DNA from: Paraphysomonas bandaiensis | Lineage: Eukaryota > Protista > Chrysophyceae | Reading direction: 5' to 3' | DNA length: 64,000 nt | NCBI GenBank assembly: GCA_965644295.1 | Contig: CBFFRP010000016.1 | Span: 62,001-126,000, forward strand | Translations under genes and position numbers: made by a program | Notes under the pieces: generated by a model | Seen by the model: the letters and a program-made list of their open reading frames with translations, nothing else | Told to the model about the DNA's origin: nothing | The model's database searches: none | Shown: positions 28,700 through 38,465 of the stretch, piece after piece | How positions within the stretch are numbered: the stretch's first letter is position 1 | Layout: each line of letters opens with the position of its first letter

Positions 28700-29085
28700 T
28701 TTCTCCTGGAAGCTAAGGTGAGCCGCATATATAGTCCGCAGATATTGTTCTGTTCACTCATAGCCAAATGCTTGTGTGGTATGTGGTGATACAAGGGACA
28801 CTAATAAGTGTGTCGTGCGTAGACGTCTTTGATCTTTGGGCCTTGATGAATAAACAGACATCCGGGAATGGACCCACCTCAAGGGCATCCGGGGTGTTGG
28901 GCTGCCTGCTGAAGCCAAGCATCCGGGCTGTTCACCTTAAGGACAGAGTGGGAGAGTGGTTGCACGGTGATGCTTGCGGTGACGAAACAAGCAGCTTTCG
29001 TAGCGCAAAATAATAGGATATCAGAGTTAAGCGCTAATTAGTTAAATTGTTTTGCTGCACTAGTTCTGAGTCTTACAATCCTATA
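28700..29085. repeat. Dispersed repeat family A, copy 2
   Basis: Contains the 5' blocks and the 3' block cgtagcgc..taggatatcagagttaagc..tagttaaattg..tagttctga. Confidence 0.85.
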
Positions 29086-29332
29086 GCTAATAGTCAGATA
29101 TTCACTATTCACTACTAGTACTAAGAATGCGATGTATTCCTTCTACCACAATGACGTCACAGCTTAACCGTGACTTTCCATGTCATAGAATGAACATATA
29201 TTTTGCAATTGAGTTTAATAGAAGTAGTTCACTTTGGTAGTAGCCATATGCGAAAAGTTATGTAGACTACACCGTCATCAGTACATTATTGATGAAATAC
29301 GGCACAACCATCCCATCGTAATATTACGGCGC

Positions 29333-30942
29333 TTAATTTTCGGGTGAAGTGTTATTTCCTTTTGGTGGTGTGCGCTTTTCAACCGTTTCCTCAATTACCC
29401 ACTTAAGGTAATCGGTACTCCCTCCTTTCACATCCACAGAAATAACTTCAGGAACATCATAAGAGTGTACCTCTTTTATAGCCGCAGTCGTCTCATCTAC
29501 TAGTTCTGAACTCGTCTGGAAATAGACCACGTGGATTAAATAGGGTAGAAGGTGTACACACTGTTACCTTTATGACCATCATTGCCTCGTCTCCTTCCTC
29601 CACTTGACCTTCCCACTCATACACGGACACGACTCTGGGCACAATATTTACACAAGCGGCAAGTTTCCTCTTAAGAAGATGCTTGGCTACAACTTTCGCT
29701 TCTTCAATGGACGGTGCGGTGCTCAATAGCACAGATACCTTGGGAGAGGACTCATCAGGTACATTAACACGTGAAGGCGAATTAAAAGCAGCCCATCTAG
29801 ATTCCTAGATGAGCATTAAATTACCATTGACAGGACATGAGAGTGTGTGTGCAACCTGTGTGTTCGGGTTGTAGTAATAAGGGTAACCATCTGGGGATAC
29901 GTACAGGTCCCATTCACTGTCCGTTGTCACTGAAGGTTCACTCAACCGAACAAACTGTGAGCAAAAGAGTGAGATATGAAGTCAACTTCTCGTTAGGATT
30001 ACACCTGTTCCGCTCCAGGGTATTCAGGAAGATGTAAGTTGTACTTCTTAACCAACGCAGGAGGAACAAACCTACGTTATAGAATTAGCTAGAATATTAA
30101 AGTACATGATAGCATTATACCTCCCGCCGAGGTAGTGAACTCCTGTGTATGCCCGCATGCACTCCTTTGGAGCGGTCAGAGATATTACCGCTAGTTCAAT
30201 TCACAACACCACATTAAACGTCAAAGAAGACAACAAAGACGCACCTACCTGCAGGTGTAAAGCCAGTGTTGTGTATGTCACCATCGTCAACACTCCATCC
30301 CGATGGTACATCCACTGAAAGCACAGGAACTGGGCTGGACGCCATGGCAGTAATTAGTTCACCGTACGGAGGTTTGGCTGGTCCTTTGAATGAGAAACCA
30401 AAGAGAGCATCCACCACTGCATCGTACTGACTCAGAGAAGGAATCTCATTAATCACAGGAATGCCAAGATCCTTGCATTGAACCACAAGATTCTCAAAAA
30501 TAGGTGCCTTTCCCTGCTTCATGTATAAGATAGTAGGCTCCATTCCGAAGTGGTACAAATGACGTGCCGCCACTAGGCCGTCTCCGCCATTATTCCCGGG
30601 ACCGCATACTATCAGCACTCTTTTCTTTTTCCCCGTATTTTTAACTATGAAATCACGAGTTGCTGCAGCGACACTCAAGCCAGCCAACTCCATCAGCTGA
30701 TCGATGCTGAATCCAGGGGAAGACATGAGCTGGACATCAATGTCCTTTGCTTGAGAGGCATCGAGATACGACAGAGTTGAGTCTGGAGATGCTGATGCCA
30801 TGAACGACATGCGAGGTATGAAGATGCTCATGAATGCACCTAAACGCAGTTTCGAGTTTGTCTTCTTAGTGAACCCCTGCGAGGATATCGCTGTAACAGC
30901 TGCGAGGGCTGTGATGGTTAGATTACGGTAAGATCTGAACAT
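29333..30942 (-). CDS. NAXE: Fusion protein: NAD(P)H-hydrate epimerase (YjeF_N/NAXE) - WW domain - CutA1, with N-terminal targeting-like leader; 6 exons
   Basis: Exons 30942-30249, 30190-30121, 30071-30005, 29954-29856, 29804-29568, 29515-29333, all GT-AG and phase-compatible. NAXE: QLMELAGLSVA, CGPGNNGGDGLVAARHL, DALFGFSF, SVDVPSGW, ISLTAPK, HYLGGRFVP. WW: EWDLYVSPDGYPYYYNPNTQ|ESRW. CutA: LAACVNIVP..SVYEWEGQVEE, HSYDVPEVI, YLKW. Confidence 0.85.
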
Positions 30943-31104
30943 TGTCAGTGCTAGCAATGAGCGGTAAATTAATGGAATAAAACTACTAGAGATTGATGCA
31001 CTATAAGCTACAAAACTTCATGTGCTGCTGTGTTCTTCACATTCCATTCTGCTGCTAGTGAAAGAATGCATCTAGATACAACATACGGCGTACTACTGCT
31101 CTAC

Positions 31105-31190
31105 GTATGTGTGTATGTATGTATGTATGTATGTATGTACGTATGTATGTATGTATGTATGTATGTATGTATGTATGTATGTATGTATGT
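31105..31190. repeat. (TATG)n microsatellite in the spacer between divergent genes
   Basis: About 20 units of gtat. Confidence 0.95.
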
Positions 31191-31403
31191 TTGTATTGTA
31201 CAGGAGTACAAGATGTAGAGTACACATCGGATACGACAATAAATGGTTGCAATGCCGAAACTAATCTGTACGGAAGTGAAGTGAGAAGACCACTTCGAGT
31301 GTTATGCTCCGCATCTTTGTCGCAGGGTCGGACAAGGATTGCTGAGTGTAGAGTAAACATGCGTTAGGATTTCTGGCTTCTTCTCGTAGTGATTGTTTGT
31401 TTG

Positions 31404-34400
31404 ATGTATTATATTATCATACTCTGCGCTTTACTCTGCAGCACTGTGTCTGGTTATAATGTGACGTCTGCTGATCGTGTGGTGTGGAGTTCTAATAGTT
31501 TTGGATGTGTGATTCATTCTCCCGGACTGTCTCCATCCTTCTATGTGTTGTCGTCTGCATACAACTGTACGACAGCAGCATGTTGGAGAATGGAATGTGT
31601 ACATTCGAACTGCTCTGGTCAAATAAGGGACATTGAGTTATTTTCGGATGGGTCACGGGGCAATCGTAGTGTTATGTTCACAGAGTTTTTATCCGGAATG
31701 CGTTTTGGTCTCCCATCGATTTCACCCTCGATGATTCACATTTCAGTGGGTGAGCGTGTTGTCTCTGTTTCCCAAGTTCATCAAATTCTAACTGGAAAGA
31801 GTACACTCCCGAGTGTTTATTGTCATCCTTCTTTTGACTCTATATCTACTCGTTTACCACTCAACGCTAACAATTCTTTGTTACGCACCCTTCGGTTACC
31901 CAATGAGACGATCTGTGAAGACTGTCCATGCGTGCACTTCAGTGGTGAAGACAACAAGTGTTCTTTACGTCTAGTGTGCACAGAGGAAGTAAAGAGTAAT
32001 AATCGAGAAAACACCATGTTTTCATGTTGTCCTGGCCTTGTTAGTGAAGATACTCATTCAGTTGCTTCCCATTCGGCTCCTATTACTGCTACATTCAGCC
32101 CCGATGGCCTCTCGTTCTCAGTACATTTTGTATCTCAATATTTGATTCCAATGAGTTGGTTGGTATCAGATATTTCACATGAGTCCACAAAAAAATGGGG
32201 GCTTTCAACCGCACCCCCGTATGCTAATTGTCAAACTATTTTCTCTCCTGCTACGTATTCTCGGTTACTCCCTCCTAACTACCGTGTGACCAATACCTAC
32301 CCAGTGTGCAAGTGGATGGATGACACAGGAAATAGCGACGCCGTCGTTCTAATGGTGTATTTGCCAAATAATGCACTCATACGAGCAAGTGAATGGTTAG
32401 GATTCTCATTCAATGTGAATTTATCGACCACTGAAACTCGAGGAGGCGCTGTTAGCGAAGCTGTATTGGAACGAGAGTTGCTGAGTCGGTGGGTGGACAT
32501 AAAAAATAGATATGATTCGATTGCAGCTGCTGACCATGAGTCTATCATTTATGCCAGTAACCGCAGTAAATTAGTTGACAGCACTAAAGTTGGAAATATA
32601 TCGTGGGTCATCAGTCTCTCTAGCTCTAGTAGAGCTCCAACGCGGGCGCCAACTGAACCCCCCAGTATTCGTCCTTCCACTGACCCCTCGTTATCTCCAT
32701 CCTACGTTCCATCTGAAACAAGTCCTAGCCTTTCACCAACACATGTTCTGCATAATGTATCAGCGTACCCGTTTTCTGAAGTCAATAGTTCTGAACATAT
32801 TGACGGAAATAGGACGTCTAATCGGCCCACAGCAGCAGTGCTGAATATGTCATCCACTGCTCAGGGTGCAGTTAATACCACTACCCTTGATATTACAGTT
32901 AATGATTACAATAGCAGCACACATAACAATGGTTCTTTCTTCTTTCTTTTACCTTATTACTCGTTGTCAGTTAATTACTCGACCGTTTTGCTTCCGCCGC
33001 CCTCCGGATGGGTCGAGCCAACACTCCTCCTTTTAGCACCGTCTGAGATTTATTCGCCTTGTTTGTCGTGGCCATGTAGTCAGGCCACCCCTGGAAATGA
33101 GTTGGTACTTGATGCGTCAGCATCATATGGAGGTGGTATTGTCGGATTGTCATTTTCATGGTTTGTCTCGTCTGTGTCATGTACCCAAGTGTCCACCAAA
33201 TGCCTCTACTCCACCGCTGTACTGGATAGTAATATGGCTGCAATTGAGAGTTATATACTGAGAAATTTCGGTGATAGTGACAGCATATTACGAATACCAT
33301 CGCGATTACTTCTCTCAAATACTCTCATCAGTTTACATATTTCACTGTCCAGCGAGCCGAGCAGAACATACGAGTCGACGTATGCAGACGTTGATGTCGT
33401 CATCACTGATCATGTATCGCCTACCGTGACAATTGATGCTTGTTATTTTCATTCAAACTCTAGTAAGATGCATAGAGACCCTCCTAATTTTGTTTTGAAC
33501 GGGCAGAAGACTCCAATTCAACGAAGTATTTTGTGGGATATGAATACCCTTGATCCTCTCCAACCCATCATTGACTTTCCTTTCAACTCCCTTCCGTTAT
33601 CCCATGATGTTCAGTTTTTTTGGGCTGTGTATGATTTCGTTGAGATAAATGCCTCAATGTATGAGAAGAATTCAGCGGCAAATAGTTCCAGTTCAGATGT
33701 AGAGAAATCAGCAACTTATGAAGTTTCACTGACAACAGAAAATAGAAGTGTGAATGGTCGACTGGTTTTCAGTAGTCGAAGTCGATTGTTGTCTATACCA
33801 CCAGGGCTTCTTGAGTGTGGCAGTGTGCTTGAGTGTTCTCCTCGTAATCAGAGTAGATACATTGTCACTTTGGCTGTTGATATGCATAGTCCAAGGGACG
33901 TAAATCGTGCTGGCGAAACACCTGTTGTAGTTGCATGGCTGAATGTTTTGCCCCTTCGCGTTGCACCTCGTATTATAGGAGGTAGCCGATGCGTTCATTC
34001 TGACACTGCTGTTGTTCTTCAAAATGCTCAAATTAGTGGTATTGATGAGAGTAGGGTTTCATATGAATGGTCATGCTGGGTTGTCGATACACGAAATGCG
34101 GAGATTATGGAGGGTACGCAGTCAGGCCCGATTAATTTTCAAACTCAGTGCAGTACTGGGAACGAATTTTCTTCCATATCGAACGAAATAACATCAGCTG
34201 ATATATCTCGCACAGCCAGCTGTACCCCGAGCCTCCGAATTGGGTGCGGCGGCCATAATATTACAACACGACGTCGAAAAAGAGTTCAGTCTACGAGCGA
34301 CTTCTTAATCTTAGAGCCATATAGCTTAGCTGAAGGTGTGCAGTATAAAATATGCCTTGGTTTGCGATTGGGGAGCAGTTCTAGTAACCATCACTGTGTG

Positions 34401-37400
34401 GGAGTGTATGTATATATTCCTGATTTTAGTGATAGTATTGAGTTACACTCCAATGCTAGTTTGCGAGAGAAATCTATTTTCCTAGGTCCCGCTGGCCCAC
34501 CTTCAATGAATGTTGACAGCCGCTTGAAAAGCTTTGCGCCATTTTTGATTCATGCTCCTTTTATTTTCGATATACGAAGGGGACGTCGGCCAACTGGTGG
34601 ACATGCTGCTGAAATAAATAGCGAACATCCAGTGAGAGTGCTGGCCCTTATGCAGTCTGTGAACACCTCGTCGCCTGGAATGTATCGATTACCTATTTGC
34701 AGCACAATGTCAACCACGAACACTCCGAGTACGCAGTGGGGCATTTCTCAGATCCTGCCTAAAGTTCATGCTTTACATAAAAATGCACCTGCGAATGCGG
34801 TGGTGTATCTTCAGTCAACCCATTCAGGTCAGCTGTCGATTGCGAGAAATAGTTTCAGCGGTGGACTATCATTTGTATTATCTGTTACTGGTAAATGCCA
34901 TAGCAATGATATGCATGGTTTCGTTGAGCGGGGTTATGCTGAAATTAATGTTGTTGTCCGAACAGAACCCTGGGATGGAAGCTTAAATGTATTTCCTTCA
35001 ACTGGGACGGCATTTGAAACAATGTTTTCTGTGCGACAAAGTGACTGGCTGGTCTCAAGCTACGATTCCGACTTACCATTGCAATTTTCCTTTCACTACT
35101 CTTCGTCGCATATTTTGAATAAAATCAATCCTGACGCTGTATTAGAGAACTTTACTGCTTACTATCACCATGCTTCGAATGAACGTGGAGAACTGATAAT
35201 GCACCCCAATTCGATTTGTTTCCGAGACTGGATGCGAACGCCACACGCAACTCTGCGAGCTCCTCACTTACGACCCTCAGCTGTGGATATATCAAACCCA
35301 TACAATGGGTACGACAATCTCTGGAACGCATCTCTCTTCTCAAACTCATGTTCTATTATTGTTGTGTCTGGCTATGTCAGAACATACGCCGGTGGAATCG
35401 CTGTACGACATGCTGATATTAGTGTATGTCCCCCACCGATTGTGTCCACATCTGTAAATGCTATCACCGAAGCCAAGGTGTACTCCAAGAATCTATCTAC
35501 TATGGCAGCCCTGAAAGTTGTTCATGATTATACTGATAATATATCGACAACTGTACTGTCGAACTACATACGATCCCAGGACACATTGCAGTCGGTCTCA
35601 ATGCTGCATTCACTAGCCTCTTTTATGAACACTTATTTACCCAAATCTCCGTGGGGTGTATTCAAGTCCTCATGCAGAAGACGCGAAATGAGAACCACTA
35701 TGATCGCACAGCTGGAGGTGGTAGCATCTTGGCAACTCACACGATCGAACGTCACCATCGAAAAAACAAACTTGGAATTCAATACGGTGGATTTCACATA
35801 CATGCGACTTGTTCCTTTTGTATTCTCACAAGCATGCATAGAACTTGGTCTCTTCCCCCATGATATGAATGAAGTCGGAAAAAAAAGGCTACTGCGCTTA
35901 GTCTATGCCATAGTTAAGATGCGTTTGGCGGATGCACAACCAACGACAACTAGCCTAGGGTATTCTCGGGAGGAGAATTGTGTGAGTCTGTTTTATAGTC
36001 GGTATGCGTCGTCGGTATCCTATCTCCTAGCTACTCTCGACCATTCTGCCCCTCTGATAGTGAAGACTTATAACGATAGCACGAAATCGCCTATGAGAGA
36101 AATGCGAAGTAATGGATATGATATCAAGGGGTATATTCATGAACTTCCTGGAGCGAACCTCAGTCATGATACTCTGTACAAGCAATCGTTGTTGGGGTTG
36201 AGACAGATTTTGGTGGGTTGTTCGCTATTGGGTGACACGGTGGGAAGTGGGGTTGATCAGACTTTATATTCTCTTCCCTTACCACAGCCACAACTCCGCA
36301 CAAATACTCCAACTTTGAGTCCTACTTCACACACTAGTGGACCGTTTAACAATATGACACTGAATAGGCCTGACGATTCTCTACGGTACAATCAAAATAT
36401 TACAAGAAATTTTTCCAATAGCTCTTTTTTTGTTAACTTTACTTTAAACGAGCTCGTGAATTCTACTGCAGATGATTTTAGCTTATCGCCTACTCCTTCT
36501 CAGACGCCGTCGGTATATACGTCTTTGCAATCACAGGAGTTCGTTGAGTTTCTTTACGAGGGAGGAAGTCAAATTGCAGCTCTGAGACAGCCAGCATTCA
36601 TTGATATATCTCAGGCATCTGTTGTTGTGGGTGAAAACCAGAATTCTGGTGGTCCAGATGATATTGAATATCGTCCACCTGGATTTAGTGCGGAGAGCAG
36701 TATAGATCCTTCTACCCACTCGTTTTTACAACTTCCTTGTGAATCTTCGAATTCAGCTGATTGCTATTCCTCGTCATCGCTAATTACACGCTCGCGAAAA
36801 AGTCTTCATGCATTGTCACTGCATGAAGTGTTTGAATTGACAGCTTCTTCTGAAGGATATATCGATATATCTTTGTTTAATATCGCTCAGCGAGATGTCA
36901 GCGGACAGGAACTGTCAGCGTCTGACACATTTACTAGTAGGAGTACCTCTTCATCATGGGGAGAAAGAAACGAAGAGTACTTGGGCAGGTCGTGGATACC
37001 TCATTCTGGTGACGATCGCGGTGTATCGGATGCTGTCATTGTTGAGTTTAAGACCTATGGCGACGACGTCGAACCTCTCTATAATCTATCACGACCAGTT
37101 GAGGTTGGAGTCAAAGTTTCTCGTCCAGACGTGCTCTGGAAGCTAGTGGTGATAGAAGATGAAGATTTATTCGATGGCGTGTCGAAACAATACAGGCCAC
37201 CTTATCTACGCTCTTCTGGCGCAAGTGTTGTAAATATTACTCGCGACAACGAATATTTAGAGGGATATTTGTCTTTTTCTCCTCGATGGGTTAGGTGCGA
37301 AATGTTCGACTCTGATAGTATGACTTGGGTGAAGCCTTCTTGGCTGGATGGATGGTGGTCACCTGACGTTGTTTCTTTCACAAGTCGGAAGGAGCTTGAG

Positions 37401-38465
37401 AGTGCTGCGGAGCAACACATGATGAGCTTTGGAAGCATGAATTCCGGAAGAAGATTAGATGAAAATGTCCGACAGAATGGTGAGAGTGTATATCTCGCCC
37501 TGAACAGCAGTGTTGATATGCTTCCGACGTCCCTTAGTTGTTTCGTGAATTCGCTGCCGGTGTCGTCGTACCAGCCATGGGATAATGGGACTGCTTTCTG
37601 GCTCCAATGGCGTGTTGTAGTTCAGTCATCTGACCCCTGTGGGGGATGCAGCGATCACGGTGTGTGTGTGTTGTTTCGTACTGCGCCCGTGTGTCTGTGT
37701 CAAAATAACTATCGTGGTCGTTTCTGCGATGAGTATGTTAGCACAAATAAGACTTCTAGTGACACCGAGAAGTGGCTTCTGTCGCGGTCTATTTCGTCAG
37801 GAGGCTTACGCGGCATTGGCTTGCTATCCGCTATACTCCTTGTTTGTTGTATTATATGCGGTGTGGGAAATAAGCTCTTTTATGCCCACCAGCAGGCGAT
37901 TCTATTCAACCCGCAGTATGACTTTGTTAGTCAGGATGATTCGGCTTTTACTTATCAGGGGGAAAACGTCCAGCCAGGGAGGGATATGTACAGTGCGGGT
38001 TGTGACGGCTGTATGTGCGTAGTATGCCAATGTACTCATTCTCAGAGTGGCCGACATGTAGACAGTAAGGAAGAAGACAGCGAGGGTTCAATGCGGTCTG
38101 TGTCGTTTCCTTCGGGTACGGGTGGACGGTCTTTGCTCTTCGACTCATTGAAGTACGCATTCCACGGAAGGGTAATGTACGACATCGCGTCGGATGACTG
38201 TGGAGACATAACTTCGCTCGGGGAATATACCAATGATAATGCGTCTCATATGTACGATGAATGGACCTTAGGAGTACCCATTCAGAACATTGAATCGAGG
38301 GAATTTTTCAATAGCCCATTTTCAAATGAACAGCAGCACAATGATGCAGATTTAAATTATAGCGATGCATGTGCACAAGACATTGAAGATTATGAACCGC
38401 GAGAGAGACGAGAAAATATTCCCGGCCTCAGATATCGTAGTAAAATATATGAGCGATGTTCATAA
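31404..38465 (+). CDS. Large intronless type I membrane protein: signal peptide, mucin-like PT/PS repeats, REJ (polycystin-1-like) module, degenerate GAIN/GPS region, EGF, single TM
   Basis: MYYIIILCALLCSTVSG signal; LVLDASASY, YEWSCW, PWDGSLNVFPSTGTAFETMF..W..PLQFSF (REJ-like); CSDHGVC..CLCQNNYRGRFC (EGF); IGLLSAILLVCCIICGV (TM). Confidence 0.8.
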   Translation: MYYIIILCALLCSTVSGYNVTSADRVVWSSNSFGCVIHSPGLSPSFYVLSSAYNCTTAACWRMECVHSNCSGQIRDIELFSDGSRGNRSVMFTEFLSGMRFGLPSISPSMIHISVGERVVSVSQVHQILTGKSTLPSVYCHPSFDSISTRLPLNANNSLLRTLRLPNETICEDCPCVHFSGEDNKCSLRLVCTEEVKSNNRENTMFSCCPGLVSEDTHSVASHSAPITATFSPDGLSFSVHFVSQYLIPMSWLVSDISHESTKKWGLSTAPPYANCQTIFSPATYSRLLPPNYRVTNTYPVCKWMDDTGNSDAVVLMVYLPNNALIRASEWLGFSFNVNLSTTETRGGAVSEAVLERELLSRWVDIKNRYDSIAAADHESIIYASNRSKLVDSTKVGNISWVISLSSSSRAPTRAPTEPPSIRPSTDPSLSPSYVPSETSPSLSPTHVLHNVSAYPFSEVNSSEHIDGNRTSNRPTAAVLNMSSTAQGAVNTTTLDITVNDYNSSTHNNGSFFFLLPYYSLSVNYSTVLLPPPSGWVEPTLLLLAPSEIYSPCLSWPCSQATPGNELVLDASASYGGGIVGLSFSWFVSSVSCTQVSTKCLYSTAVLDSNMAAIESYILRNFGDSDSILRIPSRLLLSNTLISLHISLSSEPSRTYESTYADVDVVITDHVSPTVTIDACYFHSNSSKMHRDPPNFVLNGQKTPIQRSILWDMNTLDPLQPIIDFPFNSLPLSHDVQFFWAVYDFVEINASMYEKNSAANSSSSDVEKSATYEVSLTTENRSVNGRLVFSSRSRLLSIPPGLLECGSVLECSPRNQSRYIVTLAVDMHSPRDVNRAGETPVVVAWLNVLPLRVAPRIIGGSRCVHSDTAVVLQNAQISGIDESRVSYEWSCWVVDTRNAEIMEGTQSGPINFQTQCSTGNEFSSISNEITSADISRTASCTPSLRIGCGGHNITTRRRKRVQSTSDFLILEPYSLAEGVQYKICLGLRLGSSSSNHHCVGVYVYIPDFSDSIELHSNASLREKSIFLGPAGPPSMNVDSRLKSFAPFLIHAPFIFDIRRGRRPTGGHAAEINSEHPVRVLALMQSVNTSSPGMYRLPICSTMSTTNTPSTQWGISQILPKVHALHKNAPANAVVYLQSTHSGQLSIARNSFSGGLSFVLSVTGKCHSNDMHGFVERGYAEINVVVRTEPWDGSLNVFPSTGTAFETMFSVRQSDWLVSSYDSDLPLQFSFHYSSSHILNKINPDAVLENFTAYYHHASNERGELIMHPNSICFRDWMRTPHATLRAPHLRPSAVDISNPYNGYDNLWNASLFSNSCSIIVVSGYVRTYAGGIAVRHADISVCPPPIVSTSVNAITEAKVYSKNLSTMAALKVVHDYTDNISTTVLSNYIRSQDTLQSVSMLHSLASFMNTYLPKSPWGVFKSSCRRREMRTTMIAQLEVVASWQLTRSNVTIEKTNLEFNTVDFTYMRLVPFVFSQACIELGLFPHDMNEVGKKRLLRLVYAIVKMRLADAQPTTTSLGYSREENCVSLFYSRYASSVSYLLATLDHSAPLIVKTYNDSTKSPMREMRSNGYDIKGYIHELPGANLSHDTLYKQSLLGLRQILVGCSLLGDTVGSGVDQTLYSLPLPQPQLRTNTPTLSPTSHTSGPFNNMTLNRPDDSLRYNQNITRNFSNSSFFVNFTLNELVNSTADDFSLSPTPSQTPSVYTSLQSQEFVEFLYEGGSQIAALRQPAFIDISQASVVVGENQNSGGPDDIEYRPPGFSAESSIDPSTHSFLQLPCESSNSADCYSSSSLITRSRKSLHALSLHEVFELTASSEGYIDISLFNIAQRDVSGQELSASDTFTSRSTSSSWGERNEEYLGRSWIPHSGDDRGVSDAVIVEFKTYGDDVEPLYNLSRPVEVGVKVSRPDVLWKLVVIEDEDLFDGVSKQYRPPYLRSSGASVVNITRDNEYLEGYLSFSPRWVRCEMFDSDSMTWVKPSWLDGWWSPDVVSFTSRKELESAAEQHMMSFGSMNSGRRLDENVRQNGESVYLALNSSVDMLPTSLSCFVNSLPVSSYQPWDNGTAFWLQWRVVVQSSDPCGGCSDHGVCVLFRTAPVCLCQNNYRGRFCDEYVSTNKTSSDTEKWLLSRSISSGGLRGIGLLSAILLVCCIICGVGNKLFYAHQQAILFNPQYDFVSQDDSAFTYQGENVQPGRDMYSAGCDGCMCVVCQCTHSQSGRHVDSKEEDSEGSMRSVSFPSGTGGRSLLFDSLKYAFHGRVMYDIASDDCGDITSLGEYTNDNASHMYDEWTLGVPIQNIESREFFNSPFSNEQQHNDADLNYSDACAQDIEDYEPRERRENIPGLRYRSKIYERCS

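What the first reader, a model, noticed from the sequence alone, without database searches (positions are those of the whole stretch)
29333..30942. Hidden tripartite fusion: NAD(P)HX epimerase - WW - CutA1
Seen: what the ORF track shows as separate fragments splices through five canonical short introns into one frame with no stop. A complete YjeF_N/NAXE epimerase runs into a WW domain (EWDLYVSPDGYPYYYNPNTQESRW, split by an intron) and then a complete CutA1 domain. CutA has no in-frame ATG at its N-terminus (the ORF-track start is GTG) and no room for its own promoter. Known: YjeF_N is fused to the NAD(P)HX dehydratase in bacteria (Nnr) and to pyridoxine phosphate oxidase in plants; CutA is a widespread PII-like trimer of unresolved function. 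I do not know of this architecture. Inference: a Rosetta-stone hint that CutA works in cofactor damage repair or sensing. A dimeric enzyme on a trimeric scaffold could form higher-order assemblies, with WW recruiting proline-rich partners.
Basis: partly seen in the sequence, partly recalled or inferred. Interest (0 to 1): 0.9.

Follow-up and report, generated by a model that had tools for sequence, protein, structure and literature searches.

The report
Fused NAD(P)HX epimerase–WW–CutA gene
A probable diatom makes one spliced mRNA that joins a cofactor-repair enzyme (NAD(P)HX epimerase), a WW adaptor and the enigmatic CutA protein into one 449-residue chain; the epimerase–CutA fusion occurs across ochrophyte algae but I found no paper on it, so it is a testable lead to CutA's function.

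Summary
Six minus-strand exons (30942-29333), joined across five GT-AG introns of 49-58 nt, give a 1350-nt open frame of 449 aa. Transcript contigs from three separate studies remove exactly these five introns, while a DNA run keeps them. A de novo MMETSP transcript ORF (P0151) matches my model at 448 of 449 residues.

All three domains pass Pfam's curated cut-offs: YjeF_N 139 bits, WW 29 bits, CutA1 116 bits. This locus is the only YjeF_N and the only CutA1 match found in the 62.6-Mb genome. The dehydratase NAXD lies on another contig.

The novelty claim holds only in part.
- YjeF_N-CutA1 without WW is common in public protein sets: at least 65 clusters. All named sources are ochrophyte algae, and some genes are single intronless ORFs.
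- These proteins are labelled only "NAD(P)H-hydrate epimerase", and no searchable paper links CutA with NAXE.
- The WW insert defines a smaller subgroup.

Likely working: a presequence-targeted, CutA-trimerised epimerase on flexible linkers. Any functional coupling between epimerase and CutA is inferred, not shown. 80 bacterial cutA neighbourhoods held no YjeF_N gene, and a docking job gave no verdict.

Verdict: a real gene, a new variant of a known kind, of moderate interest.

The parts
29031..31019 (-). Span of the spliced transcript contigs (5' UTR of at least 72-77 nt, CDS, 3' UTR of about 300 nt)
   Evidence: X1 contig 29031-31014, X4 contig 29191-31019, X5 contig 29240-30741, each with all five introns removed
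30249..30942 (-). Exon 1: start codon ATG at 30942-30940, N-terminal presequence (aa 1-50) and most of the YjeF_N/NAXE domain
   Evidence: (YjeF_N 4.8e-36 on exon 1 alone)
30793..30942 (-). N-terminal extension, aa 1-50. It has a hydrophobic stretch (LTITALAAVTAI) followed by SSQG-F and a Ser/Thr/Lys/Arg-rich stretch. I read it as a signal peptide plus transit peptide (bipartite plastid-type presequence); this is inferred.
   Evidence: hydropathy; similar signal-peptide-then-Phe N-termini in P0195, P0186, P0193, P0201; pLDDT below 50; no targeting predictor was available
30191..30248 (-). Intron 1 (58 nt, GT..AG)
   Evidence: joint 30190/30249 in X1, X4, X5; absent from DNA run X14
30121..30190 (-). 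Exon 2, holding the invariant catalytic lysine K240 (30167-30165) in the SLTAPK motif
   Evidence: K240 is invariant in 50 fusion proteins; it corresponds to E. coli YjeF K192 in 'IALKPG' (PMC5938422)
30072..30120 (-). Intron 2 (49 nt, GT..AG)
30005..30071 (-). Exon 3: C-terminal part of the NAXE fold (FVPPALVKKYNLHLPEYPGAEQ)
   Evidence: aligned to the end of mouse AIBP, 2dg2
29955..30004 (-). Intron 3 (50 nt, GT..AG)
29940..30780 (-). Complete NAD(P)HX epimerase (YjeF_N/NAXE) domain, aa 55-282, spanning exons 1-4
   Evidence: mouse AIBP 2dg2 at E 1.6e-65 over chain residues 26-259 of 265, yeast 1jzt at 1.7e-46; pLDDT above 90
29856..29954 (-). Exon 4 (99 nt, phase 0 at both ends): end of NAXE, a short linker and the first two and a half strands of the WW
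   Evidence: WW 1.5e-05 on the exon alone
29805..29855 (-). Intron 4 (51 nt, GT..AG), which splits the WW domain. Retaining it gives an in-frame stop.
   Evidence: WW-bearing relatives P0001, P0003 and P0010 encode the WW in one uninterrupted ORF, so this intron is lineage-specific
29787..29924 (-). WW domain, aa 288-316 (EWDLYVSPDGYPYYYNPNTQESRWAAF). It resembles PRP40/FBP11 WW domains. The usual terminal Pro is replaced by Phe.
   Evidence: 29.0 bits, cut-off 26.9; PRPF40A 8pxw, 5.9e-07; three strands, pLDDT about 75; W-A-x-F in six WW-bearing relatives whose text was read
29568..29804 (-). Exon 5: end of the WW, a linker and the N-terminal half of CutA1
   Evidence: CutA1 2.9e-17, profile positions 2-56
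29516..29567 (-). Intron 5 (52 nt, GT..AG, phase 0, after ...MVIK). Its position is shared with the WW-bearing relatives.
   Evidence: the ORFs of P0001, P0002, P0003, P0005 and P0019 all run on past ...IK into a codon starting GT (Val); L005 and L006 show CutA in two ORFs
29333..29515 (-). Exon 6: C-terminal half of CutA1, a 16-aa tail (VEKRTPPKGNNTSPEN) and the stop codon TAA at 29335-29333
   Evidence: CutA1 5.6e-11, profile positions 57-98
29384..29744 (-). Complete CutA1 domain, aa 331-433, with the family-invariant residues C361, S370, Y372 and E383, and near-invariant T339, W374, G376, K389, E412
   Evidence: rat 1osc 9.1e-25, human 1xk8/2zfh, rice chloroplast 2zom 2.8e-24; (pLDDT above 90)

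Best explanation
This is one nuclear gene of a probable diatom. It is transcribed and spliced into one mRNA for a 449-aa protein with four parts: an N-terminal targeting extension, a complete NAD(P)HX epimerase (NAXE/YjeF_N) domain, a WW domain and a complete CutA1 domain.

Shown here:
- the gene structure, the five splice junctions and the single open frame;
- the integrity of all three domains;
- that this locus is the organism's only detected NAXE and only detected CutA;
- that the epimerase-CutA fusion is conserved in many ochrophyte algae.

Inferred:
- The epimerase domain is catalytically competent. It keeps the GPGNNGGDG and DALFGFSF motifs and the catalytic lysine K240. It interconverts R- and S-NAD(P)HX so that the separately encoded dehydratase can regenerate NAD(P)H.
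- The CutA domain forms the homotrimer typical of its family. The result would be a trivalent epimerase in which each catalytic domain hangs from the trimer core on a flexible tether of about 50 residues.
- The clefts between CutA subunits bind a small heterocyclic ligand. Pteridines are the reported CutA ligands. This would tie the enzyme to redox-cofactor homeostasis.
- The WW domain in the tether recruits a proline-rich partner that is still unknown.
- The N-terminal extension probably sends the protein into the plastid.
For: Gene model and frame. Splicing: three RNA-derived contigs from three studies carry all five joints, and the DNA run does not. An independent transcript ORF, P0151, matches at 448 of 449 residues. 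Domains pass Pfam cut-offs and match solved structures end to end. This is the only YjeF_N and only CutA1 locus found in the genome, with Carb_kinase/NAXD elsewhere. At least 65 fusion clusters were found, and every named source is an ochrophyte. Intronless single ORFs on genomic contigs encode P0195, P0179 and P0008. In 50 fusion proteins the catalytic K240, the GxGNNGGD motif, D178 and D211-x-PSGW are invariant, as are CutA residues A360, C361, S370, W374, E383, K389, H406 and Y408. So both halves are under purifying selection. Of 68 fused CutA domains, 54 fall in one clade. The AF2 model gives two domains with pLDDT above 90, a three-stranded WW at about 75, linkers below 50 and pTM 0.60, which fits beads on a string. 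CutA is a conserved trimer with intersubunit clefts and binds pteridines (PMC12685090). The NAXE lysine is required for activity (PMC5938422).
Against: No enzyme activity, oligomeric state, ligand or localisation was measured. Functional coupling rests on a single ancient fusion lineage, which is weak evidence on its own. 80 Terriglobales cutA loci with 10 kb on each side held no YjeF_N gene. The docking job for NAXE on a CutA trimer returned no verdict. By alignment offset and my recalled E. coli numbering, one of the three cleft glutamates mutated in E. coli CutA (E59) is Gly in this protein, and the E. coli Cu(II) ligands C16 and H83 are Ser and Val. A sister clade of diatom-like NAXE proteins lacks CutA altogether, so the fusion is dispensable in some lineages. 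Contigs cannot exclude a minor CutA-only transcript.
Confidence: 0.6

Rival explanations
1. CutA is only a scaffold. It was recruited purely as a very stable trimerisation module, and its own ligand or metal chemistry has nothing to do with NAD(P)HX repair. On this reading the fusion says nothing about CutA's ancestral function.
For: CutA is a compact, very stable trimer and has been reused as a designed assembly building block; PDB titles 7l85, 8t6c and 8uf0 appear among the hits. The AF2 model shows no fixed contact between domains (pTM 0.60, disordered linkers). The complex job gave no support. There was no nnr-cutA clustering in 80 bacterial genomes.
Against: The fused copy is the only CutA in this genome, so whatever CutA normally does must be done by this protein. 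The family-invariant cleft and core residues C361, S370, Y372, E383 and E412 are retained across 50 fusions, not only the interface residues.
Confidence: 0.25
2. The fusion saves on targeting. In algae with four-membrane plastids, two small soluble plastid proteins were fused so that one bipartite presequence imports both. The domains share a compartment but are otherwise functionally unrelated.
For: The N-terminal extension has a signal-peptide-like hydrophobic core followed by Phe, as do several other fusion proteins. The solved rice CutA is titled as chloroplastic (2zom). All named fusion carriers are algae with secondary plastids.
Against: Localisation is only inferred from the look of the sequence. 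The fusion persists across many ochrophyte classes with tight conservation, and a WW adaptor was later inserted. That suggests the linker region does more than tether the two halves.
Confidence: 0.12
3. The fusion is an artefact or a read-through of two neighbouring genes. On this reading the real products are separate NAXE and CutA proteins, and the joined contig comes from a conjoined or chimeric transcript.
For: Transcript contigs cannot show starts or ends, and the laying tool itself warns that a contig across two genes shows no single transcript.
Against: The frame is continuous with no stop and no ATG for CutA. The WW domain straddles the junction region and is itself split by a spliced intron. 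Identical spliced contigs appear in three studies. The same architecture occurs as single intronless ORFs in other genomes and in at least 65 clusters.
Confidence: 0.03

Closest known systems
NAXE / AIBP / yeast Nnr1 (stand-alone eukaryotic NAD(P)HX epimerase, YjeF_N, EC 5.1.99.6)
   Same: Residues 55-282 align with mouse AIBP (2dg2) from chain residue 26 to 259 of 265 at E 1.6e-65, and with yeast YNL200C (1jzt). The GPGNNGGDG, DALFGFSF and D-x-PSGW motifs and the catalytic Lys are present. An N-terminal targeting extension is present, as in the mammalian and plant enzymes.
   Different: It carries about 165 extra C-terminal residues, made up of a WW domain and a full CutA1 domain.
Bacterial Nnr (YjeF): YjeF_N epimerase fused to the Carb_kinase dehydratase
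   Same: It uses the same logic of fusing the epimerase to another protein on its C-terminal side. The T. maritima Nnr N-domain matches at 3.1e-20.
   Different: The partner here is CutA, not the dehydratase. The dehydratase is a separate gene on contig C409.
Plant PPOX-NAXE fusion (Arabidopsis At5g49970/PDX3)
   Same: It is a lineage-wide eukaryotic fusion of NAXE to a protein of another cofactor system. That fusion was used to argue for a second, B6-related role of NAXE (PMC5938422).
   Different: The partner (CutA versus pyridox(am)ine phosphate oxidase) and the lineage (ochrophytes versus plants) differ. The CutA fusion is not mentioned in that paper (no occurrence of 'CutA').
CutA1 (E. 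coli CutA, human CUTA, rice chloroplast OsCutA1), PII-like trimers
   Same: Residues 331-433 match rat, human and rice CutA at about 1e-24 over the full domain. They keep all invariant family residues.
   Different: It is not a stand-alone protein of about 12 kDa, has no start codon of its own, and sits at the C-terminus of an enzyme. The E. coli His2Cys copper ligands appear not to be conserved; this rests on alignment offset and numbering recalled from memory.
PRP40/FBP11-type WW domains
   Same: It has the W-x4-SPDG-x2-YYYN-x2-T-x2-S-x-W pattern. The best solved matches are PRPF40A WW domains. The Pfam WW score is above the cut-off.
   Different: It is embedded in a metabolic enzyme rather than a splicing or ubiquitin factor. 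The terminal W-x-x-P is W-A-x-F here and in the six WW-bearing relatives whose text I read. The ligand is unknown.

Membership tests
NAD(P)HX epimerase (YjeF_N, PF03853) | Pfam YjeF_N match above the gathering score over the whole profile | tested here: met
   139.1 bits against a cut-off of 24.9, profile positions 2-169 of 169
NAD(P)HX epimerase (YjeF_N, PF03853) | Full-length similarity to biochemically validated, structurally solved epimerases | tested here: met
   mouse AIBP 2dg2 at 1.6e-65 (query 55-282 to chain 26-259); yeast 1jzt at 1.7e-46
NAD(P)HX epimerase (YjeF_N, PF03853) | [quoted passage not shown] | tested here: met
   K240 in SLTAPK lies 42 residues before the domain end. It is invariant in 50 fusions and aligned to the mouse and yeast Lys. 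The motif context comes from PMC5938422.
NAD(P)HX epimerase (YjeF_N, PF03853) | Epimerase activity on R/S-NAD(P)HX | not testable with these tools
   needs an enzyme assay
CutA1 (PF03091) | Pfam CutA1 match above the gathering score over the whole profile | tested here: met
   115.8 bits against a cut-off of 22.4, profile positions 2-98 of 99
CutA1 (PF03091) | Family-invariant residues (AACVN Cys, S..Y.W.G, the Glu before ..IKT) | tested here: met
   C31, S40, Y42 and E53 of the domain (C361, S370, Y372, E383) are invariant in 31 diverse CutA sequences including this one;
CutA1 (PF03091) | Homotrimer with ligand-binding clefts between subunits | not tested
   The monomer fold is predicted with pLDDT above 90. 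Trimerisation is inferred from the family's solved structures.
WW domain (PF00397) | Pfam WW match above the gathering score; two Trp 20-23 residues apart; three-stranded sheet | tested here: met
   29.0 bits against a cut-off of 26.9. W292 and W314 are 22 residues apart. Strands 293-296, 302-306 and 311-314 appear in the model.
WW domain (PF00397) | Conserved Pro two residues after the second Trp | tested here: not met
   The sequence is W-A-A-F. Phe replaces Pro here and in P0006, P0001, P0003, P0002 and P0019. It is a conserved variant rather than decay.
Bifunctional Nnr (epimerase + dehydratase) | Carb_kinase (PF01256) domain on the same polypeptide | tested here: not met
   There is no PF01256 in the protein. 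The only genomic match is on contig C409.

The most novel reading that the evidence does not exclude
The fusion is a true Rosetta stone. On this reading CutA, whose function is unresolved in all domains of life, is a binding or sensing module for damaged or reduced heterocyclic redox cofactors (pterins, and possibly NAD(P)HX itself), and it works together with NAXE. The phylum-wide ochrophyte fusion would then be the first genomic pointer to that shared role. The plant NAXE-PPOX fusion and the diatom NAXE-5-formyl-THF cyclo-ligase fusion seen here in passing would fit the same picture. It would also bear on the suspected moonlighting function of NAXE.
Probability: 0.2. Interest if true: 0.85.

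Novelty: new variant of a known kind. Interest (0 to 1): 0.55.

Why it matters
CutA is conserved from bacteria to humans and still has no agreed function. Pteridine binding was reported only in 2025 (PMC12685090). NAXE is a disease gene whose simple repair role has been questioned (PMC5938422).

In a whole algal phylum these two proteins form one polypeptide, and in this organism the fusion is the only copy of each. That gives a concrete, cheap set of experiments:
- express the fusion and its halves;
- measure the oligomeric state;
- measure epimerase kinetics with and without pterins, copper or NAD(P)HX;
- knock the gene out in a transformable ochrophyte that carries the fusion, such as Nannochloropsis.

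The result is also a caution for annotation. These proteins are labelled only as epimerases, and in intron-rich genomes they are split into fragments, so the CutA half goes unnoticed.

Tried and rejected
1. Bacterial gene neighbourhood as independent support. A single-protein scan returned 80 loci, nearly all Acidobacteriota (Terriglobales). My HMM of 114 NAXE domains found no YjeF_N within 10 kb on either side (1.45 Mb in all). This is one clade only, so it is weak negative evidence.

2. Complex prediction with a CutA-domain trimer plus one NAXE domain scored 0.00 and returned no verdict. It is evidence neither for nor against binding.

3. The idea that the WW recruits the separately encoded dehydratase. 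The visible NAXD exons in L004 contain no PPxY or PPLP motif. The NAXD gene model is incomplete, so the idea is unsupported rather than excluded.

4. The ESM Atlas look-up of P0151 returned only plain YjeF_N clusters at 0.83-0.84 and gave no information on taxa.

5. The listing of cluster members and the look-up of encoding contigs gave no organism names for the WW-bearing relatives. The taxonomic range of the tripartite form therefore stays unknown, apart from the shared intron position.

6. The search of earlier findings returned nothing relevant apart from this finding itself.

7. Species identity was not pursued. The organism is called a probable diatom only because of its many full-length silicon-transporter genes and because its homologues are ochrophyte.
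Full report
**Observation**

On the minus strand, six exons concatenate to 1350 nt. They are 30942-30249, 30190-30121, 30071-30005, 29954-29856, 29804-29568 and 29515-29333. This gives 449 codons plus TAA with no internal stop. The five intervening segments are 58, 49, 50, 51 and 52 nt and all begin with GT and end with AG.

Scanned exon by exon, Pfam finds four matches:
- YjeF_N on exon 1 (4.8e-36);
- WW on exon 4 (1.5e-05);
- the first half of CutA1 on exon 5 (2.9e-17, profile positions 2-56);
- the second half of CutA1 on exon 6 (5.6e-11, profile positions 57-98).

The halves of a profile meeting across a predicted intron is itself strong evidence for the model.

**Transcript evidence**

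Public runs holding this stretch were found and four were laid on 28900-31400.
- Three runs from three different studies each contain one contig in which exactly the five predicted segments are skipped. They are X1, X4 and X5 (a polyA marine metatranscriptome).
- These contigs cover 29031-31014, 29191-31019 and 29240-30741.
- The DNA run X14 contains a collinear, unspliced contig (28921-31098) and none of the joints.
- A de novo MMETSP transcript ORF in the protein database, P0151, is 449 aa and marked 'type:complete'. It matches my model except for D220E. That difference corresponds to the single A>T change at 30283 seen in X4.

The first ATG downstream of the contig 5' ends is the one at 30942, read directly. 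There is no in-frame ATG between the epimerase and CutA. Retaining the 51-nt intron 4 would give a stop. Contigs cannot show transcript ends, so a minor internal start cannot be excluded, but nothing points to one.

**Domains**

On the full-length protein all three domains exceed Pfam's curated cut-offs: YjeF_N 139.1 bits, CutA1 115.8 bits, and WW 29.0 bits against a cut-off of 26.9.

Against solved structures:
- residues 55-282 match mouse AIBP/NAXE almost end to end (E 1.6e-65);
- residues 331-433 match rat, human and rice-chloroplast CutA (about 1e-24);
- residues 288-316 match PRPF40A WW domains.

An AlphaFold2 model built on an alignment of 50 fusion proteins was obtained.
- The epimerase (56-283) and CutA (331-435) have pLDDT above 90.
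- The WW is three-stranded at pLDDT about 75.
- The linkers (284-290 and 317-327) are below 50, and so is the N-terminus (1-50).
- pTM is 0.60, which indicates independent domains on flexible tethers.

The catalytic lysine defined in E. coli YjeF is K192, in the motif IALKPG. [quoted passage not shown] Here it is K240, in SLTAPK, and it is invariant in all 50 fusions. The CutA residues that are invariant across 31 diverse CutA proteins (C361, S370, Y372, E383) are all present.

The WW has the PRP40/FBP11-like pattern, but W-A-x-F replaces W-x-x-P. This variant is shared by the six WW-bearing relatives whose text I read.

**Genomic context**

The window lies in a 62.6-Mb assembly.
- This locus is the only YjeF_N match and the only CutA1 match in it.
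- The dehydratase (Carb_kinase/NAXD) is on another contig.
- Many full-length silicon-transporter genes, together with ochrophyte homologues, indicate a diatom or close relative.
- A (GTAT)23 microsatellite separates the gene's 5' end from a divergent 2358-aa ORF.

**How common is the architecture?**

An exhaustive profile-free search with exon 5 found several long proteins with CutA at the C-terminus. Pfam shows that they are YjeF_N+CutA1.

A word-indexed search with one of them returned a list in which most of the best hits carry both Pfam families. My own domain mapping counts 103 proteins with both domains. Sixty-five of these have near-complete epimerase domains without WW, and three have them with WW.

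Every named source is an ochrophyte alga:
- Ochromonadaceae sp. CCMP2298 (KAJ1441529.1), Spumella, Ochromonas and Chrysophyte H1;
- Heterosigma akashiwo (A0A6S9JPG5) and Rhizochromulina marina (A0A7S2S4U9);
- Chrysoparadoxa australica and Pinguiococcus pyrenoidosus;
- Nannochloropsis oceanica (GAB5030888.1).

Their annotations mention only the epimerase. In three other genomes the fusion is a single uninterrupted ORF on a genomic contig (P0195 on a 1.4-Mb contig, P0179, P0008). The fusion therefore does not depend on any splicing model.

Two trees bear on its origin.
- On a CutA-domain tree, 54 of 68 fused domains form one clade (SH-aLRT 84).
- On the epimerase tree the fusions sit on both sides of the deepest well-supported split, and a CutA-less clade is nested among them.
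- Both fit one old fusion with later loss, but the trees are unrooted and short.

**The WW insert**

The WW insert is confined to a subgroup:
- this protein;
- P0006/P0265;
- exon-sized fragments from metagenomic eukaryote contigs (the P0001 cluster, P0002, P0003, P0010/P0280, P0019, P0047, P0099).

In those relatives the WW is not interrupted, so intron 4 is specific to this lineage. The phase-0 intron after ...IK in the middle of CutA is shared.

**Literature**

- No paper in the searchable corpus contains both CutA and NAXE in a relevant sense, or CutA1 and YjeF, or CutA and 'hydrate epimerase'.
- The 2025 study that identified pteridines as CutA ligands does not mention any fusion (PMC12685090).
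- The 2018 study arguing that NAXE moonlights lists only the dehydratase and PPOX fusions (PMC5938422).

The architecture is thus in the databases through automatic annotation but, as far as I could search, is not discussed in print.

**Mechanism**

Shown here: one gene, one mRNA, one frame, and three intact domains that are conserved over a phylum.

Inferred from family knowledge:
- The epimerase is active.
- CutA trimerises, which would give a trivalent enzyme on flexible tethers.
- The CutA clefts bind a small heterocycle.
- The WW binds a Pro-rich partner.
- The N-terminal extension is a bipartite plastid presequence. It has a hydrophobic core, then Gly-Phe, then a hydroxylated and basic stretch. 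Similar N-termini occur in several other fusions.

Whether the two halves are functionally coupled is open. The independent tests I could run gave no support.
- No YjeF_N gene lay near cutA in 80 Terriglobales genomes.
- The docking job gave no verdict.
- No WW-ligand motif was found in the visible dehydratase exons.

The rivals are scaffold-only, shared-targeting economy and read-through artefact. I rate them 0.25, 0.12 and 0.03.

**Verdict**

The fusion is a new variant of the known NAXE fusion theme (Nnr, PPOX-NAXE). The two-domain form is widespread but unremarked, and the WW-bearing form is rare.

Interest is moderate (0.55). It gives a concrete handle on two proteins with unresolved biology, but a single fusion lineage is weak functional evidence.

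Noticed in passing
P0215 (Amphora coffeaeformis), P0207, P0212, P0222, P0238, P0240, P0253, P0254, P0258, P0263 (related proteins, not in the window): A well-supported clade of diatom-like NAXE proteins lacks CutA. Instead it ends in two or three tandem copies of an unannotated motif, W-x-x-x-Y-A-A-Y-C-A-E-K-E-A. P0207 has no Pfam match there.
   Followed up: partly
P0209/P0210 (MMETSP, 635 and 633 aa) and P0307 (JGI contig, 481 aa): This is another NAXE fusion: YjeF_N followed by a complete 5-formyltetrahydrofolate cyclo-ligase (PF01812, profile positions 1-186 of 186). It is seen in two independent sources at 74% identity, and its nearest stand-alone relatives are diatom 5-FCLs. It is of interest beside CutA's reported pteridine binding.
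   Followed up: partly
window 31105-31196: A (GTAT)23 microsatellite lies in the roughly 370-nt gap between this gene's 5' end and the divergently oriented 2358-aa ORF that starts at 31389. Read contigs break there.
   Followed up: no
window about 28900-28990: This is a high-copy repeat. Summed contig depth is 53,735 in DNA run X14 against about 104 over the gene, with many loose ends running into different flanks.
   Followed up: no
window 31389-38465 (+): A single 2358-aa ORF, rich in Ser/Thr and Cys, with a C-terminal hydrophobic segment. It looks like a giant surface protein. It was not analysed.
   Followed up: no
P0265 (563 aa, MMETSP), the WW-bearing relative of P0006: Its N-terminus carries a B-box zinc finger (PF00643, 27.4 bits) ahead of the NAXE-WW-CutA body. 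This may be a chimeric transcript or a longer isoform.
   Followed up: no
P0304, P0305, P0054, P0116, P0300 (42 hits): Other CutA1 fusions exist in public data: thioredoxin-like plus TPR/HEAT plus CutA, CutA plus a chagasin-type inhibitor, Spaetzle plus CutA, and GPCR plus CutA. None was checked for artefacts.
   Followed up: no
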